A stretch of DNA of 60,425 nucleotides, filler included, from Hausera hauseri (GCA_046269625.1; 11 parts of 11 records of this genome joined end to end with filler, not necessarily neighbours in it); one strand, 5' to 3'; counted from the first letter of the whole stretch, positions 1 to 5,313 are shown. Numbers and translations: made by a program. The notes: generated by a model from the letters alone, not told the origin.

Positions 1-55
1 GGTTGTATAGAATGTATAAAATGTTGGTTGGATGTGTGTGAAAAATAATGATTGA

Positions 56-110
56 ATGATCCCTGGCAGGGTTCGGAAAACTGGGGAAACGGGAATAACC
101 ACGGTTGAAA
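56..110 (+). repeat. Conserved non-coding element immediately 5' of the SL, copy 1
   Basis: ATGATCCCTGGCAGGGTTCGGAAAACTGGGGAAACGGGAATAACCA..TGAAA aligns with the reverse complement of 4122-4186. Confidence 0.85.
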
Positions 111-154
111 GCCGTCAAACGGTCTTTACAAAACCATTGTTTTATAATTGCATG
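111..154 (+). ncRNA. Flatworm-type spliced-leader exon (44 nt) fused to an mRNA-derived sequence; not an SL RNA gene
   Basis: GCCGTCAAACGGTCTTTACAAAACCATTGTTTTATAATTGCATG has the 5' GCCGT..ACGGTC hairpin and 3' TTGCATG of platyhelminth SLs. It is followed by a kinase 5' end, not a GT donor or Sm site. Confidence 0.8.
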
Positions 155-165
155 ATGCTTTCACA

Positions 166-391
166 ATGAGCAGTCTGAATGACTTTAAAAGATTACGGAA
201 AATCGGGCAAGGTGCATTTGGTAACGCGTGGTTAGTTGAAGCTAAAGCCGATAATATGAAATACGTTGTAAAAGAAATGGGTTCTTATAAGATGTTCGAA
301 AGAGAATGACTAGATGCCAGAAAAGAGATTCTTCTGCTATCGAAAATGAATCATCAAAATATCGTTACGTATTTGAAATACGAAGAAGAAG
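166..391 (+). pseudogene. NEK1/3/5-like Ser/Thr kinase N-lobe fragment
   Basis: MSSLNDFKRLRKIGQGAFGNAWLV..YVVKEM..ERE*LDARKEILLLSKMNHQNIVTY contains GxGxFG, the VxK lysine, the helix-C Glu and HxNIV. There is a premature TGA at 307-309 and the sequence is truncated after subdomain IV. Confidence 0.85.
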
Positions 392-397
392 GAAAAA

Positions 398-1340
398 TTG
401 CCAAATGAAAAGAAATTAGATGAATGGTACAAACCAAAATTAAAGGAAAATAACGCAATTGGAGCTTTGAAATGTGAAAACCAAGGATGGCAAAATATTC
501 ACTCAATGGATAAGGGCAAGAATAATTTAGATATTTGGAATCAGAGATATATGCTGACTAAGAAAATAACGCAGTTGGAAATTTGTAGTGTCACAGCATT
601 ATCATTTGTTACGATTTATAGAGGTCTTTTGGTAATAAATGTTACATGGAGAGGACGTACATATGTTGGTACCCTACTCGACAGTACAAAATATGATTTC
701 AGTTCATCACAAGCTCAAGACACTGGTATAAAAATAGAAAATTATCAATTTAATCGGTCAAACAGAGGAAAGAAAAGGACACCATCTGTTCATAATCCCT
801 GTACGCGGCCTGCTCGTCTTAGACACAAACATTGTCTAGAGGAAGCGAGTAACTCGTCAGAAATCGGAACTCGACGGATTTCATCGAGACACACACAAAA
901 CTGTTTGAACCAGTTAGATAACATTACAGTATCCGCTGCTCCAAGCATGAGTGGTGAATCCGATATCGATAGTTCGAAAACGTGTATATTTTCCAAGACC
1001 CGTTCGGTTACAAGGTCGGTCGCAAAAAAAAATCTAAGTCCGAACCGGACACCAGTGCCGAAGAAGGTCAAGAAACAACTAGTAAACTCATTCGATGTAC
1101 AAAATCCAACTGTTACAAACGAATTGTCAACAACATTGCCTTTAAATATCATTTGTTGATGGGTCACGGTGATAAAGATGAAATAAATTATGATAATGAC
1201 ATTAAAAACGAACTCAATTGTAATGATAATGAAGATAAAATGGACTGTCTGAAACCGGACAATTCCGTCATCACAGATGTCCCTATAATTGATGAAAAAA
1301 GTATTATTGCAAAAACCAAGATAAGCTGCCAAGCAGCTAA
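398..1340 (+). pseudogene. ZNF608/ZNF609 (Brakeless/Scribbler)-like fragment, frameshifted
   Basis: GLLVINVTWRGRTYVGTLLDSTKYD matches the conserved family block. A single C2H2-like finger, LIRCTKSNCYKRIVNNIAFKYHLLMGH, lies in the next frame (ORF 982-1344). Confidence 0.8.
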
Positions 1341-1509
1341 ATAAATATCATTGACAAAAATATTGATAAAGATTGCAAAAATTTAAAATTAGAAATTATG
1401 AAATGTACTATGAGTGTCCACGATATCCTGGTGTGGACAAGATTAAACAAACGAAAATTTATGAAAAATACTATTGTTGGAACAATAACATAATATTTAA
1501 TTGGTAGCA

Positions 1510-1538
1510 TCGTGGATCGAAACCACGCTCTGCTACCA
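1510..1538 (+). tRNA. 3' fragment of initiator tRNA-Met (about nt 48-76) including CCA, copy 1
   Basis: TCGTGGATCGAAACCACGCTCTGCTACCA has a perfect 5-bp T-stem, the initiator-type loop ATCGAAA (A54/A60), the acceptor strand CTCTGCTA and terminal CCA. Confidence 0.85.
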
Positions 1539-1578
1539 TTTGTTGGATACACATTAACATAATATTTAATTGGTAGAC

Positions 1579-1607
1579 TCGTGGATCGGAACCACGCTCT
1601 GCTACCA
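1579..1607 (+). tRNA. 3' fragment of initiator tRNA-Met including CCA, copy 2
   Basis: TCGTGGATCGGAACCACGCTCTGCTACCA differs from copy 1 only at 1589, which is tRNA position 58. Confidence 0.85.
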
Positions 1608-2077
1608 TTTGTTTGAACATTATCATAAGATTTTAATAATAAATTCGTCCTTGTCTCACATGGTTTGCTGGGCCCATTTCTGGCAAACCTTATTCCATGG
1701 TTCATATTACCCTCTATATAATCTACTCTACCATTTGGCGAAACATTAACATAGCATTTAACTGATAAACTCGTTTTTATATCACACGTTTTTCCCTTCA
1801 AATAATCCACCATATCCCTTTGGTTTCCCCTCCATTCCCCACCTGATATATAATTATATGTGAACCTATTTAAATTTATTTGTGCAATTTTCGCAGCCGT
1901 TGATAACGGAGTGCTGCTCTCCGGGGGATTTTCTCCACCATTAACTTTGTGTCTGTATACAAGCATTCTGAATTTATCATGCACACATACATCAAACACA
2001 CAAACCCTGGCGGGGTTCATCAAACTAAAAAACAAACAATAACTCACAACGATACTATTAACACGACACACAAATAC

Positions 2078-2704
2078 CTTCAGCGTCTTTATCAAGAGTC
2101 CTTCAGCGAACGTATCCTCTTCCACCGTAATTAGTAGTACGATTTTGTCACCAATTTCCTTCGCCAATTCATCTGGGACTTGTAGCTGACTCCCTGACTT
2201 TTCGTTCAAATCACAATCATCCACAGAACTGAGATTTCCAAATAAAGCAGTCACGTCTCGACGAATGAGTTTTGGAACGTTCAGTAAATCTAACTGATCA
2301 CCATATTCAAATTCTGATATACTTTTTTCACATATTTCTTCGTTATCAAATCGTGTTTTAGTTTCAGAATCATGCTGAGATATAAACATCGATACCAGTT
2401 CTAACGTTATAAATTCTAAAATATCCATTTCATAATTTTGCACTTGTTTCTGTAAATAAGACGATTGGGACATTTTTGATAGTCTATGTTTCGGAGGCCT
2501 TTCCTGGCCTGAATTCTCCATATTTTTTGGTGAGAGTCGAGAGGCATGACCCTCGAACTCGTCTGCAACGATAGCTATCCTTTTTTTCTTAAATTTCATA
2601 ATTTTATCTTTGAAATTCAATTCTTCTGTTTTTGTCCGTAACAGGACATTGTAGACAATAATTGTCCATTTCATAATTTGTAAATTTTCAATTTTCTCAA
2701 TCAT
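2078..2704 (-). pseudogene. Unidentified host-gene exon or fragment (N-terminal part of ORF 1337-2704)
   Basis: Protein-like composition ending at a donor-like AAG|GTATTT. The rest of the ORF runs through repeats. Confidence 0.35.
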
Positions 2705-3170
2705 TAATTATCAATTCTACTGCTATAGCAGTAGTACTTTCATACATCTATACACTTATTTATCTACGTACATTCATCAATATTTATATAAATTTATACA
2801 AGTGGGAATTCCCACAAATTATTGCAGCTATCAAATCTACCATAATACAACACTTTCATCAACGGAACCATTTGAGCAGCGTATCCTCTACATCTGCACT
2901 AACTTACGACTGTTATTTGCATGGAATTCGAGGGTAGATTTTATTATCTGTATTTCTCATCTTAGTCTATGATTCTGTCGTTTTAAAAATGACTAATAGT
3001 TCCTCGTTGATCGGAAAATACAGTTGGTATAGACGAGGTGTCGTTTTAATTAATTGGAACGTCAGTAAATGAAGCTTCAATATTACTGATCGGTAATGAA
3101 AGAATGGTGGTGCATCAAGAAGTTATAATAGCTCTCTGTAAATTTGAACAAAGGAGAATGTTGTCATATT

Positions 3171-4070
3171 TTAAGTTTCCAATTGCGTTATTTTCACTTT
3201 ACTGACATCCCTGGATTCTGATAAATGTTCAGTATCGTTTTGGAATTGATTTCCTTTCGTCGTCTCTTTTCTACTCCGACTTTTATTATTTGGAGTTGCT
3301 TTGCTACTCGATACAATCTCTTCATTCGATATATTTTCAACAATTACATCGGCAGATTGAGATTTATCTCTTTTGCGTAAAGTAGCTTTCCTTGGACTAC
3401 TTTTATCGTCAGATGCATTTGATTGATGAGAAATGGAAATACTTTGTGAGATATTGGCTTCATTAGTCGATTTTTCATTACCTGCCGATACCAACAAACT
3501 CCTTTCAAAATGCTCCAATAAACGTTCCTTTATCCCATTGTATTCCCTCGCCAAACGTAAGTAATCCGCAGACGTTGACATCAACGAAGACGACAACTGT
3601 ACGCCACTTAAAAATCCCTCATTAAAAATCCTCATAGTCTCAGCACATACATCACACGGACTGCTGCTCAAATCGGCAATACTCGTCTTCTGTGCAACAA
3701 CCTGATCTGTCAACATCGACACTAACTTATTCTCCATAGCCTCTCGTCTATTATTCGCCGTCATCTCGCGTATTTCCTTCTCCAACAATTTGTTTTCGCT
3801 CACCAGCAATTCATTCCGTTTTTCGTATAGTTTATTGTCATTTGTCAATTTCAATACGTTAATTTCGTCGCGCAATTTTACATTGTCATCGTTACATATC
3901 TATTGTTGGGCAATCTCGAGTAATCTGTTCTTCTATTGTTTAATGACGCTCTTGCTCTCATCAACTTCGGCTTTGAGTAACTTTATTTCTTGTTCACATT
4001 TTAATTTGTCAAAATTCACCAATTTCATATTATTCTTCAAATTACGTATATTGCTACTACATTTTGACAT
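3171..4070 (-). pseudogene. Coiled-coil protein pseudogene downstream of SL copy 2
   Basis: The frame MSKCSSNIRNLKNNMKL..KQ*KNRLLEIAQQ*ICNDDNVKLRDEINVLKL continues into ORF 3171-3875. It is heptad-rich, has two TAG stops and shows no visible intron. Confidence 0.6.
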
Positions 4071-4077
4071 GGTTCAA

Positions 4078-4121
4078 CATGCAATTATGAAACAATAGTT
4101 TTGTAAAGACCGTCTAACGGC
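4078..4121 (-). ncRNA. Flatworm-type spliced-leader exon (44 nt), copy 2
   Basis: The minus strand reads GCCGTTAGACGGTCTTTACAAAACTATTGTTTCATAATTGCATG, 40/44 identical to copy 1. Its 5' GCCGTTAGACGGTCTT resembles the planarian SL (recalled). Confidence 0.85.
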
Positions 4122-4186
4122 TTTCAGTCCTCGTAGACTATGGTTATTCTCGCTCTCCCAGTTTTCCAAACCCTTCCAGGGATCAT
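4122..4186 (-). repeat. Conserved non-coding element immediately 5' of the SL, copy 2
   Basis: ATGATCCCTGGAAGGGTTTGGAAAACTGGGAGAGCGAGAATAACCA-(insert)-TGAAA. Confidence 0.85.
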
Positions 4187-4796
4187 GTCACACTCATACT
4201 TATTTCGCACACTCTGTTTTTATATCACGCACATTCATTCAACCATTTTAACCTTTAACAACCCGATTTTTATCAACCAGTACACACAGTGCAACCAACA
4301 TGAACACACACATTTATACACATTCATACACACATATATATACACTATATATTTATATATACACTATATACATCCCCTACCCTTTTTCACTTAATCTTCT
4401 TGATGTTGGCCGGATTCCCCAACTAATCAGTCAGGTTCCAACAGACTGTATACCTACAATCAAAGCAAAACCTGAAAGAAAACCTGATGAATGAAGATAG
4501 AATAATTATTTCACCGATTCTGTGTCAAACAATCAAAAGTAATACGAATTTTGTTTAATTGTGATGTATATAGTTAAAATATGATATGCACGCATACACG
4601 TCATTTTACAATATTTTGTTTTCAATATGGTATTTGTGAGGTGGGATTGAAACGGATATTAACGTATAAATTTAATTCAAAGGTAATTCAGTAAACAGCC
4701 AACAGAAAGTTAGGAAATTCAGAAAAAAAGGAAAATAAGACTCATTTCACGAGTGAATTAGATAAATGTTATAGAAACTTTTATAATAAATATCTT

Positions 4797-5313
4797 ATGG
4801 ATAATTCTATTTTACAATCTTCAAGTGACGTTGAGGTCGGGATGGTAGATGCTCGATCTACTAACATGGCGACCAACGCTTCAAGAGACTTCTTCGTAAA
4901 GAAATTGATGCCAAAAGAATTCCAGAAAGGTGACTACGTGGAAACCTTTATGGGAAAATGCGAGAGATACTTCGACTTTATAAAGATGTCGGAGAAGGAC
5001 CGTGAAACTGTGGTCCTGTGCCTGTTGGCGGAACAGGCACAGGAAAAATACAATTTGGTGAACTAGAAGGTTAAAGGGTACCAAAGCAGGTTGAGAAAAG
5101 CATTTTCAAAGCCCACAACACAGTGCGGATATATGTATGAGGCATTGAACTGCAGAATGAGGAGGGGGGAGAACCGGAAGCCTACTTCAACAAAATCGAA
5201 CAACTGGGTGCTCTAACAGAGGGATTGATGATCTACTGTTGCGACAATCCAGAGATGAGAAAGGAAATCTACCGCAGTGACGAAAAAAGTGTTGAACAAA
5301 TCAAAGAGAAAAT
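4797..5313 (+). mobile_element. Ty3/Gypsy-like gag fragment, degenerate
   Basis: PKEFQKGDYVETFMGKCERYF..LLAEQAQEKY..LRKAFSK follows a capsid-like pattern, with a stop and a frameshift. Confidence 0.6.

What the first reader, a model, noticed from the sequence alone, without database searches (positions are those of the whole stretch)
56..4186. Spliced leaders fixed in DNA: two SL-headed gene copies behind the same ~55-nt element
Seen: a 44-nt sequence at 111-154 (+) and 4078-4121 (-), 40/44 identical, each ends in TTGCATG. Each abuts the 5' UTR of a different decayed gene, with the ATG 11 and 7 nt later. Established: platyhelminth SLs start with a CCGT..ACGG hairpin, end in AUG and are added at the RNA level. 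In SL RNA genes a GT donor follows the exon, which is absent here. Inference: these are cDNA copies of trans-spliced mRNAs. Ordinary retrocopies land at unrelated sites, yet both carry the same upstream ATGATCCCTGG.AGGGTT.GGAAAACTGGG..GAATAACCA..TGAAA. That points to a dedicated route. The mRNAs may have inserted or recombined into SL RNA loci so that the SL promoter is kept (compare SL-targeting NeSL/CRE/SLACS elements), or a non-autonomous element may capture SL-capped mRNAs by template switching. This is the best candidate for an undescribed system in the window.
Basis: partly seen in the sequence, partly recalled or inferred. Interest (0 to 1): 0.88.

Follow-up and report, generated by a model that had tools for sequence, protein, structure and literature searches.

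The report
Spliced-leader gene fragments inside retrotransposon LTRs
A flatworm LTR retrotransposon family carries a DNA copy of the spliced leader at a fixed spot in its long terminal repeat, and behind that leader sit the front ends of dozens of different host mRNAs, so the leader appears to serve as a handle for capturing gene fragments.

Summary
Window 111-154 (+) and 4121-4078 (-) are 40/44-identical copies of a flatworm-type spliced leader (SL). Each is followed at once by an intronless, decayed 5' piece of a different host mRNA, and each is preceded by the same sequence. For gene 1 the junction falls exactly on an AG acceptor of an intron-bearing paralogue. For gene 2 it falls within 1 nt.

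The shared upstream element is not an SL promoter or a small element. It is the inner end of a ~320-nt block that opens a 2-3.7 kb LTR (TGTTGGAAC...GTTCCAACA). Some copies are preceded by a polypurine tract. The LTR is followed by a primer-binding site complementary to this genome's own initiator tRNA-Met, and in one contig by decayed integrase.

The assembly holds at least 360-450 SL-bearing copies. In 50 sampled LTRs the SL sits at the same place, followed by more than 30 different host mRNA 5' ends (cullin, P-type ATPase, RRM, EGF and others), with no poly(A). The same cargo occurs at different sites and behind different LTR subtypes.

Best reading: an SL resident in U3 acts as a homology handle for serial capture of trans-spliced mRNA 5' ends by template switching during reverse transcription. 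The structure is well supported. The mechanism is inferred, and no RNA data could be obtained.

The parts
1..110 (+). Inner part of block U, the opening section of LTR 'a'. It is cut by the contig start and ends ...GGTTGAAA just before the SL.
   Evidence: Aligns with the U block of 30+ other loci.
111..154 (+). DNA-encoded spliced leader, copy a (44 nt, ends TTGCATG; no GT donor follows).
   Evidence: The same 44-mer is present behind U in every sampled LTR.
155..434 (+). Cargo 1: intronless, decayed 5' part of a NEK-like protein kinase mRNA. 5' UTR 155-165, ATG 166, exon-exon junction 291|292, in-frame stops.
   Evidence: Weak Pkinase N-terminus hit (E=0.0037, below the family cutoff). Paralogue L089 has ...ttttatttttag|ATGCTTTCA at the SL junction and AAG|GTTTGA where the window continues without an intron. 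The same cargo and junction occur in L026.
435..600 (+). Block R: a repeat of the LTR backbone that follows the cargo. One unit plus part of a second.
   Evidence: (D3/D4). Its entry point differs between copies.
620..1345 (+). Unique segment with broken ORFs, probably an older captured fragment. No other copy in the assembly.
1346..1440 (+). Piece of LTR backbone of copy a, matching 2793-2632 of copy b. LTR a breaks off here.
   Evidence: (I2, I12).
1473..1609 (-). Two tandem 69-nt units. Each holds a primer-binding site (1607-1580 and 1538-1511) complementary to the 3' end of initiator tRNA-Met including CCA, and each is preceded by ..CAACA AA.
   Evidence: (D1). This genome's tRNAi-Met genes end CGTGGATCGAAACCACGCTCTGCTA. 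The LTR-end+PBS 25-mer has 241 matches against 0 in the control.
1610..4443 (-). LTR 'b', complete, 2,834 nt. Starts TGTTGGAACC (4443) and ends GTTCAAACA (1618-1610).
   Evidence: The same block order and orientation are seen in C88988. U-SL and the terminal block and/or PBS lie on the same strand 2.1-3.7 kb apart in C617998, C700771, C272730, C906534 and C854966.
4122..4443 (-). Block U of LTR b.
4078..4121 (-). DNA-encoded spliced leader, copy b.
3196..4077 (-). Cargo 2: decayed 5' part of a coiled-coil protein mRNA. ATG is 7 nt after the SL. There are in-frame stops and a 109-nt deletion between 8-nt direct repeats at 3830-3852.
   Evidence: Paralogous locus L103 has ...ttatttctgttttag|TTTGAACCATG at the junction.
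3127..3195 (-). Block R of LTR b.
   Evidence: (I1, I5).
2720..2815 (-). Palindrome GTGGGAATTCCCAC, an A/T-rich TATA-like stretch and hairpin CTGCTATAGCAG. This is a conserved LTR module and a possible LTR promoter (inference only).
   Evidence: (L026, L102 have the same module).
1846..2432 (-). Block S1 of the LTR backbone.
   Evidence: Found 1.3-1.9 kb after the SL on the same strand in L111, L044, L034 and L028.
1610..1900 (-). Terminal block of the LTR, next to the PBS.
   Evidence: 101 candidates in the genome, often directly followed by the PBS unit.

Best explanation
WHAT IT IS (well supported): both SL-headed gene copies lie inside the LTRs of one LTR-retrotransposon family. The LTR is 2-3.7 kb long. 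It starts TGTTGGAAC and ends GTTCCAACA. It is followed after AA by a PBS complementary to the host's initiator tRNA-Met, and in 3'-type copies it is preceded by a polypurine tract. About 320 nt into the LTR, in what should be U3, every sampled copy carries a complete spliced leader at the same position. Right after the leader's ATG comes an intronless 5' portion of a host trans-spliced mRNA. This portion differs from LTR lineage to LTR lineage, lacks a poly(A) tail and joins the LTR backbone at variable points. Cargo-bearing LTRs have been copied to many sites. The window holds one complete LTR (4443->1610, minus strand) with its PBS, and a second, truncated LTR of another subtype facing it (1->~1440).

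HOW IT WORKS (inferred): a single early event placed an SL in U3. Since then the resident SL has acted as a homology handle. During minus-strand DNA synthesis across the 3' U3 of the element's RNA, reverse transcriptase occasionally jumps illegitimately into a co-packaged host mRNA. It copies that mRNA to its 5' end. Within or at the end of the 44-nt SL that all trans-spliced mRNAs share with the element, it switches back to the element's RNA and continues into block U. Each such double switch replaces the SL-proximal cargo with a new mRNA 5' end and can leave remnants of older cargo further downstream. Because U3 is copied to both ends, the new cargo is then spread by retrotransposition.
For: LTR nature:
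- Homology begins sharply at TGTTGGAAC, with unrelated flanks in most copies.
- Six copies (L004, L007, L011, L022, L056, L076) are preceded by a shared ...GGATTGCCCCAAGGAGGGGGGAAA polypurine end.
- The far end reads GTTCCAACA AA TGGTAGCAGAGCG....
- This genome's own tRNAi-Met genes end in the exact complement.
- An rve integrase remnant lies downstream of the PBS on the same strand in C88988.
- In seven contigs, U-SL and the terminal block/PBS lie on the same strand 2.1-3.7 kb apart.

Cargo derives from trans-spliced mRNA:
- Exact AG acceptor and a missing intron for gene 1. An AG acceptor within 1 nt for gene 2.
- Cargo ORFs match Pfam profiles from position 1: cullin, Cation_ATPase_N, SCAPER_N, RRM_1, EGF, TPH.
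- 0 of 40 U-linked copies have an A run of 10 or more within 1.5 kb.

Fixed 5' junction and variable content:
- In 30 aligned LTRs, similarity ends exactly after TTGCATG.
- 64 SL loci gave 41 cargo kinds, 50 of them behind U.

Mobility of loaded LTRs:
- The same cargo is found at different flanks.

SL as the hinge:
- The same cargo sits behind different U subtypes, and the same U/SL subtype sits before different cargo.
- The SL 3' half is 3.8% diverged, against 7.7% for U and 9.7% for the SL 5' half.
- Layered cargo. L111 has 209 nt of one cargo followed by L012-type cargo from its nt 332. L106/L107 have ~99 nt of one cargo followed by gene 2 from its nt 38.
- The junction with the backbone (block R) varies between copies.
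Against: - No RNA evidence.
- No single element with both LTRs and target-site duplication could be read.
- C617998 shows PPT-LTR-PBS. This is either a collapse of two identical LTRs in assembly or a tandem arrangement.
- The PBS unit is tandemly repeated (66-69 nt) in many contigs, which is unusual for a PBS.
- The integrase lies only ~0.8-1 kb after the PBS in C88988, so that copy is deleted or misassembled.
- The divergence gradient in the SL counts related copies as independent. Selection on the SL 3' half could also produce it.
- The layered-cargo cases could in part be alternative mRNA isoforms.
- Template switching itself is not observed.
Confidence: 0.6

Rival explanations
1. Splice-mediated capture. 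An ancestral LTR carried an SL exon with a working donor in U3. Read-through transcripts from the 3' LTR were cis-spliced from that donor to the trans-splice acceptor of a downstream host gene. One template switch with a normal co-packaged RNA then restored the rest of the LTR.
For: It would also give a junction exactly at SL|acceptor and keep the resident SL intact. Lineage-specific SL changes as far 3' as position 33 are shared by LTRs with different cargo, e.g. L018 and window copy b. In Echinococcus a solo LTR donor is spliced to a former trans-splice acceptor (PMC4558846).
Against: No LTR with SL followed by a consensus donor or SL-RNA intron was found. The only SL+GTGAGT locus (C82114) has no block U. 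Once loaded, an LTR has lost the donor. Yet cargo appears to have been replaced repeatedly in several sublineages.
Confidence: 0.15
2. Hot-spot insertion. Ordinary LINE-type retrocopies of SL-mRNAs were inserted again and again at one preferred site of the LTR.
For: SL-headed retrocopies without any LTR do exist in this genome: L036, L041, L045, L046, L048, L049, L054.
Against: All U-linked cargo keeps a complete 5' end but lacks its 3' end and poly(A). This is the opposite of target-primed reverse transcription, which truncates 5' ends. The U|SL junction is identical in all LTR subtypes, as expected of one event rather than many. Older cargo is replaced rather than displaced.
Confidence: 0.05
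3. First reader's option 1. The mRNAs recombined into SL RNA gene loci, so the shared upstream block is the SL RNA promoter and drives SL-headed transcripts.
For: The SL sits at a constant distance behind a conserved block, and no other promoter has been demonstrated.
Against: The block begins with an LTR terminus next to a PPT and belongs to a unit that ends at a PBS. The two loci with SL-RNA intron sequence have unrelated upstream DNA.
Confidence: 0.05
4. Artefact or simple structure. Either cDNA contamination or chimeric assembly, or the two copies are terminal inverted repeats of one DNA transposon.
For: The assembly is very fragmented (909,086 contigs). The two copies are inverted in the window.
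Against: There are hundreds of diverged copies (75-95% identity) with decayed ORFs, each with different flanks. The other sampled loci show single copies without an inverted partner, including 5.7 kb of C88988. The two window copies are of different subtypes. No target-site duplication beyond chance was found.
Confidence: 0.03

Closest known systems
Relict spliced leaders in dinoflagellate retrogenes (Slamovits & Keeling 2008; reviewed in PMC6050394, PMC5585692)
   Same: A DNA-encoded SL at the 5' end of intronless gene copies shows that trans-spliced mRNAs were reverse transcribed and re-entered the genome.
   Different: In dinoflagellates the copies are free-standing, often functional genes, sometimes with stacked relict SLs. 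Here the SL-headed fragments are truncated at the 3' end, mostly decayed, and sit at one fixed position inside the LTR of a retrotransposon that then spreads them.
Host gene transduction by LTR retroelements (acutely transforming retroviruses; maize Bs1; plant TE gene capture reviewed in PMC13317346) - from general knowledge
   Same: Host mRNA-derived sequence is carried and multiplied by an LTR element. Template switching between co-packaged RNAs is the accepted route.
   Different: Those cases have cargo in the internal region, with one or a few captures. Here the cargo is in the LTR itself (U3), with one invariant 5' junction defined by the SL and more than 30 different cargoes in a sample of 50 LTRs.
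SL loci near LTR/LINE elements in parasitic flatworms (PMC12582326, 2025)
   Same: That survey set aside 597 SL-bearing loci associated with LTR and LINE elements, carrying only leader sequence.
   Different: The loci were discarded, not dissected, and were explained as integrated retrotransposons whose own transcripts had been trans-spliced. Here the sequence behind the SL is host mRNA, and LTR sequence lies upstream of the SL. A single trans-spliced transcript cannot give that arrangement.
SL-gene-specific non-LTR retrotransposons (NeSL-1, CRE1/2, SLACS, CZAR) - from general knowledge
   Same: A retroelement tied to the spliced leader sequence.
   Different: Those elements cut and enter SL RNA gene exons with a site-specific endonuclease and have no LTRs. 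Here there is no SL RNA gene, and the element has LTR, PBS, PPT and integrase.
Chimeric retrogenes formed by template switching of LINE reverse transcriptase (e.g. U6-L1 chimeras) - from general knowledge
   Same: The reverse transcriptase reaches the 5' end of one RNA and continues on another, giving a fixed partner upstream of varied cargo.
   Different: Those chimeras are LINE-driven, with poly(A) and target-site duplications, and the upstream partner is a small RNA. None of these features is seen here.

Membership tests
LTR retrotransposon | Long terminal repeat with TG...CA ends and short terminal inverted repeats | tested here: met
   Starts TGTTGGAAC. Ends GTTCCAACA in C88988 and L008, and GTTCAAACA in the window.
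LTR retrotransposon | Primer-binding site complementary to a tRNA 3' end directly after the 5' LTR | tested here: met
   TGGTAGCAGAGCGTGGTT(C/T)CGATCCACG lies 2 nt after the LTR end. It is the exact complement of the 3' end of this genome's tRNAi-Met genes plus CCA. Oddity: the unit is tandemly repeated.
LTR retrotransposon | Polypurine tract directly before the 3' LTR | tested here: met
   AAGGAGGGGGGAAA|TGTTGG with a shared internal end in L004, L007, L011, L022, L056 and L076.
LTR retrotransposon | Internal gag-pol genes | tested here: inconclusive
   Only a frameshifted rve integrase core (E=1.1e-5, below the curated cutoff) downstream of the PBS in C88988. No RT was seen, because the contigs are too short.
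LTR retrotransposon | Two LTRs of one element plus target-site duplication | not testable with these tools
Processed copy of a trans-spliced mRNA | SL joined exactly at the gene's 3' splice (trans-splice) acceptor | tested here: met
   Gene 1: L089 has ...tttttag|ATGCTTTCA, an exact match. Gene 2: L103 has ...gttttag|TTTGAACC, offset 1 nt in an 89% paralogue.
Processed copy of a trans-spliced mRNA | Introns absent | tested here: met
   The window runs through 291|292, where L089 has AAG|GTTTGA.... L101 may show a GTAAGT intron for gene 2 (weaker).
Processed copy of a trans-spliced mRNA | Poly(A) tail and target-site duplication (LINE-type retrocopy) | tested here: not met
   No A run of 10 or more within 1.5 kb in 40 U-linked copies. 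The cargo is truncated at its 3' end.
SL RNA gene | GT donor after the SL exon, Sm-binding site and 3' hairpin | tested here: not met
   Absent in both window copies and in all LTR copies. Present only at C82114 (GTGAGT...AATTTTTGA...hairpin) and, in diverged form, at C133253. No Rfam hit in the window.
SL-targeting non-LTR elements (NeSL/CRE/SLACS) | Insertion within an SL RNA gene exon; restriction-like endonuclease and RT ORF; no LTR | tested here: not met
   No SL RNA gene context. LTR/PBS/PPT are present instead.
DNA transposon with terminal inverted repeats | Inverted ends of one element flanked by a target-site duplication | tested here: not met
   The copies are of different subtypes (79% identity). 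Other loci have no inverted partner. No duplication beyond chance was found.

The most novel reading that the evidence does not exclude
The spliced leader is used by a retrotransposon as a universal recombination handle. Because every trans-spliced mRNA carries the same 44 nt, an LTR with a resident SL can serially swap in the 5' end of any such mRNA during reverse transcription and then broadcast it genome-wide inside its LTRs. This would be a standing, SL-dependent gene-fragment capture system. It could seed new SL-headed retrogenes, antisense or small-RNA sources against host genes, or LTR-driven N-terminal peptides.
Probability: 0.4. Interest if true: 0.85.

Novelty: new variant of a known kind. 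Interest (0 to 1): 0.7.

Why it matters
SL trans-splicing and retrotransposition are both well studied. I found no description of a link in which the SL acts as the capture point for host mRNAs inside an LTR. A 2025 survey of parasitic flatworms discarded about 600 SL loci near LTR/LINE elements without dissecting them. If the model is right, it explains those loci. It would add a high-throughput route of gene-fragment capture in animals: dozens of genes at one junction. It also gives a built-in tag, SL plus stratified cargo, for reading the order of capture events. In practice, SL-based searches for SL RNA genes, trans-spliced genes and operons in flatworm genomes need to mask these LTRs.

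Tried and rejected
- Rfam scan of the window at E<=10: only chance-level hits, no SL RNA or hammerhead.
- ARAGORN: no tRNA gene in the window. The tRNA-like pieces are PBS copies.
- Short-LTR idea (block U as a complete ~300-nt LTR with TGGTTGAAAG as its PBS): rejected. No second U lies within 1.5-3 kb in any locus. The real PBS lies 2-3.7 kb downstream.
- Symmetric inverted pair as the general architecture: rejected. C88988 has no inverted partner in 5.7 kb.
- Target-site duplication around LTR b: only an 8-mer, at chance level.
- The '109-nt intron' in gene 2 is not an intron (no GT..AG). It is a deletion between 8-nt direct repeats.
- A functional full-length SL RNA gene was not found. Only C82114 (SL lacking its first ~12 nt) and the diverged C133253 turned up.
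- Parent of window 620-1345: no other copy in the assembly.
- Pfam gave nothing for the gag-like ORF at 4797-5063 or for the 455-aa ORF at 2704-1340.
After that, no letters of 4304-4346 were sent to any search tool, and only local scripts read the window file.
- Literature: no paper holds the SL sequence as text. PMC3994195 (planarian SL3) is not held. The resemblance of the first ~15 nt to the planarian SLs therefore rests on my memory only, and the organism was not identified.

Full report
1. OBSERVATION

The window (contig C282061 of an 868.6-Mb, 909,086-contig assembly) contains two inverted copies of a ~130-nt stretch: arms 56-101/4141-4186 (87%) and 106-157/4075-4126 (90%). Within them, 111-154 (+) and 4121-4078 (-) are 44-mers that differ at four positions and end in TTGCATG. 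In copy a the next ATG is 11 nt further on (166). It opens a reading frame with a protein-kinase N-terminus (weak Pfam hit) that soon hits stops. In copy b the ATG is 7 nt further on and opens a coiled-coil frame, also broken. No GT follows either 44-mer.

It is not a chance repeat. The 102-mer has 449 first-look candidates in the assembly, and all 40 that were scored match at E<=4e-24. The last 21 nt of the leader plus GT, with up to 2 mismatches, occur 362 times against 0 for the reversed control.

2. THE 44-MER BEHAVES AS A SPLICED LEADER AND THE GENES ARE cDNA-DERIVED

In 30 of 30 loci fetched with the 102-mer, similarity stops exactly after TTGCATG. Unrelated sequence follows, often with an ATG within ~10 nt.

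One locus, C82114, carries the 3' two thirds of the 44-mer followed by GTGAGT, an AATTTTTGA Sm-type site and a hairpin. That is the anatomy of an SL RNA. A diverged second copy is at C133253.

For gene 1, a paralogous genomic locus (L089, 85% identical) reads ...ttttatttttag|ATGCTTTCA..., so an AG acceptor sits exactly at the window's SL|cargo junction. Its exon ends AAG|GTTTGA, whereas the window continues without an intron (junction 291|292). For gene 2, locus L103 (89%) reads ...ttatttctgttttag|TTTGAACCATG, one T away from the window's junction.

The cargo behind the SL in other loci encodes N-termini of ordinary host proteins, with Pfam matches starting at profile position 1. These include cullin (5.6e-73), cation ATPase N-terminus, SCAPER, RRM, EGF, TPH and a Rab-binding PH domain. 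The inference 'cDNA copies of trans-spliced mRNAs' stands.

3. WHAT THE SHARED UPSTREAM ELEMENT REALLY IS

Aligning the upstream flanks shows that similarity does not end at ~55 nt. It runs ~320 nt further, through a TA/TG-rich stretch, and begins abruptly at TGTTGGAAC with unrelated DNA before it. I call this block U.

In six loci (L004, L007, L011, L022, L056, L076) the DNA before TGTTGG is instead a shared sequence ending in the polypurine run AAGGAGGGGGGAAA. This is the classical internal-end/PPT/3'-LTR boundary.

No second U lies within 1.5-3 kb of any copy, so U is not itself a short LTR. Instead, comparison of a longer contig (C88988) with the window shows the same order of blocks on the same strand:
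- block U;
- the SL;
- cargo;
- block R, a ~110-170-nt repeat;
- a module with the palindrome GTGGGAATTCCCAC and TATA-like sequence;
- block S1;
- a terminal block.

The terminal block ends GTTCCAACA, the exact inverted complement of the opening TGTTGGAAC. After AA it is followed by TGGTAGCAGAGCGTGGTTCCGATCCACG. This genome's own initiator-type tRNA-Met genes (anticodon loop CCCATAACC) end CGTGGATCGAAACCACGCTCTGCTA. The sequence is therefore a primer-binding site for tRNAi-Met, CCA included.

Downstream of it, on the same strand, C88988 carries a frameshifted integrase core (rve, E=1.1e-5).

Coordinates from three independent genome searches place U-SL and the terminal block and/or PBS on the same strand, 2.1-3.7 kb apart, in C617998, C700771, C272730, C906534 and C854966. 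Together with C88988 and the window, that makes seven contigs.

Conclusion: the SL and its cargo lie inside a large LTR, ~320 nt from its 5' end, in what should be U3.

In the window, LTR b runs from 4443 to 1610 on the minus strand and is followed by two tandem PBS units (1609-1473). LTR a, of another subtype (79% in U), enters from the contig start and breaks off near 1440, facing b. The inverted arrangement is a local accident, not the architecture of the family.

4. POPULATION PICTURE

Among 64 distinct SL-bearing loci in hand, 50 have block U and the cargo falls into 41 kinds. Four features stand out.
- The U|SL junction is the same in all U subtypes.
- The same cargo with the same junction occurs at different genomic flanks, so loaded LTRs have been transposed. 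Examples are the EGF cargo in L031/L033/L034 and the ATATGCCTGC cargo in L018/L028/L106/L111.
- The pattern is reticulate. The same cargo sits behind clearly different U subtypes (L017/L070, L030/L072, L001/L026, L018/L051/L111). One U/SL subtype, recognisable by private changes in the SL, precedes several cargoes (L007/L020, L010/L019, L023).
- Cargo is only the 5' part of the mRNA. It meets the backbone at varying points of block R and never shows a poly(A) run (0 of 40).

Two cases look layered. L111 has 209 nt of one cargo, then L012-type cargo from its nt 332. L106/L107 have ~99 nt of one cargo, then gene 2 from its nt 38.

Across 30 LTRs the 3' half of the SL is about half as diverged (3.8%) as U (7.7%) or the SL 5' half (9.7%). 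The Fisher p values are 4e-4 and 3e-5, but the copies are related, so this is suggestive only.

SL-headed copies without any LTR also exist (L036, L041, L045, L046, L048, L049, L054). Retrocopying of trans-spliced mRNAs is therefore general in this genome.

5. MECHANISM

Shown:
- position of the SL and cargo in the LTR;
- mRNA origin of the cargo;
- a single conserved U|SL junction;
- many cargoes;
- spread of loaded LTRs;
- reticulation around the SL.

Inferred: the SL in U3 was acquired once and now serves as the homologous return point for reverse transcriptase. While copying the 3' U3 of the element's RNA (minus-strand synthesis runs from the backbone towards U), the enzyme jumps illegitimately into a co-packaged host mRNA. 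It copies that mRNA to its SL and switches back within or at the end of the shared 44 nt.

This model accounts for:
- the exact 5' junction;
- the ragged 3' junction;
- the absence of poly(A) and introns;
- the restriction to mRNA 5' parts;
- older cargo surviving distally;
- the younger SL 3' half;
- U/cargo reshuffling.

I put ~0.85 on the structure and ~0.45 on this particular mechanism.

The main rival is splice-mediated capture from an SL exon with a live donor in U3. It also gives exact junctions and would keep the resident SL whole. Some shared private changes near the SL 3' end fit that rival. However, no LTR with SL plus donor or intron was found.

LINE-type insertion into a hot spot is contradicted by complete 5' ends, missing 3' ends and the lack of poly(A). 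Insertion into SL RNA loci is contradicted by the LTR termini, PPT and PBS. A DNA-transposon reading is contradicted by single copies elsewhere and the lack of a duplication.

6. COMPARISON WITH WHAT IS KNOWN

DNA-encoded relict SLs marking retrogenes are established in dinoflagellates. Gene capture by LTR elements and retroviruses is established (and general knowledge). A 2025 study of parasitic flatworms set aside 597 SL loci near LTR/LINE elements and suggested they were trans-spliced transposon transcripts that re-integrated.

In full-text searches I found no description of the following combination:
- the cargo is host mRNA;
- it lies within the LTR at a single SL-defined junction;
- it has been exchanged many times.

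LTR sequence upstream of the SL cannot come from one trans-spliced RNA, so the earlier explanation does not fit these copies. I class this as a new variant of a known kind.

7. CAVEATS
- No RNA data.
- No complete element with both LTRs and a target-site duplication.
- The assembly is highly fragmented. C617998 shows PPT-LTR-PBS, which suggests collapse of identical LTRs or a tandem arrangement.
- The PBS unit is tandemly repeated in many contigs, which is unexplained.
- The organism was not identified. Its flatworm or planarian nature rests on the SL's form and on my memory of published planarian leaders.

Noticed in passing
window 4797-5313 (+): A gag-like ORF (89 aa, then broken frames) lies outside LTR b, beyond its outer end at 4443 and on the other strand. 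It is probably part of a different retroelement into which, or next to which, element b inserted. No Pfam hit.
   Followed up: partly
window 1473-1623; also C370705, C602634, C68751, C875904, C472202: The unit 'LTR-end 9-mer + AA + tRNAi-Met PBS + ~32 nt' is tandemly repeated (66-69 nt period, 2-4 copies) in many contigs. Multiple PBS copies after an LTR are unusual and unexplained.
   Followed up: partly
window 3830-3852 (-): The gene 2 copy lacks 109 nt that are present in four other copies (L100, L101, L103, L106). The gap lies between 8-nt direct repeats (ATTGACAA), as expected of a template slip or a deletion.
   Followed up: yes
L061/L032 (C82114) and L063 (C133253): These are the only two loci with SL-RNA intron sequence (GTGAGT, Sm-type AATTTTTGA, hairpin). 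C82114 lacks the first ~12 nt of the SL and is joined to a repeat also seen in L062. C133253 has a different exon ending in ATA. A full-length functional SL RNA gene was not found in the assembly.
   Followed up: partly
L035, L060, L110: SL copies truncated at their 5' end lie 40-150 nt behind a shared motif TTGGTGTCAGA. L043, L110 and L054 share another upstream motif (...GTCACG(A/G)TT(T)GC). These may be further repeat families that carry an SL.
   Followed up: no
L039/L040 (C499674): Tandem duplication of a 72-nt unit made of the SL's last ~35 nt plus the first 37 nt of its cargo, inside an LTR.
   Followed up: no
L003, L011, L050 (and LTR-less L049): Some captured fragments still have open frames of 300 aa or more (TPH protein, cullin, PH_RBD protein). 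These may be recent captures or expressed N-terminal fragments.
   Followed up: no
window 2802-2815 and L026, L102: The perfect palindrome GTGGGAATTCCCAC (a kappaB-like GGGAATTCCC core), followed by TATA-like sequence and a GC hairpin, is conserved in the LTR backbone downstream of the cargo. It is a candidate LTR promoter.
   Followed up: no
window 620-1345 (+): This segment has no other copy in the assembly. Its broken frames include a C-x4-C...H-x5-H zinc-finger-like stretch. It is absent from L026, which carries the same NEK cargo.
   Followed up: partly
L008 (C804088) 1-400: Here the PBS units and ~175 nt of the terminal block on the minus strand abut the start of a plus-strand LTR. This is another head-to-head nesting of two elements of the family.
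   Followed up: partly
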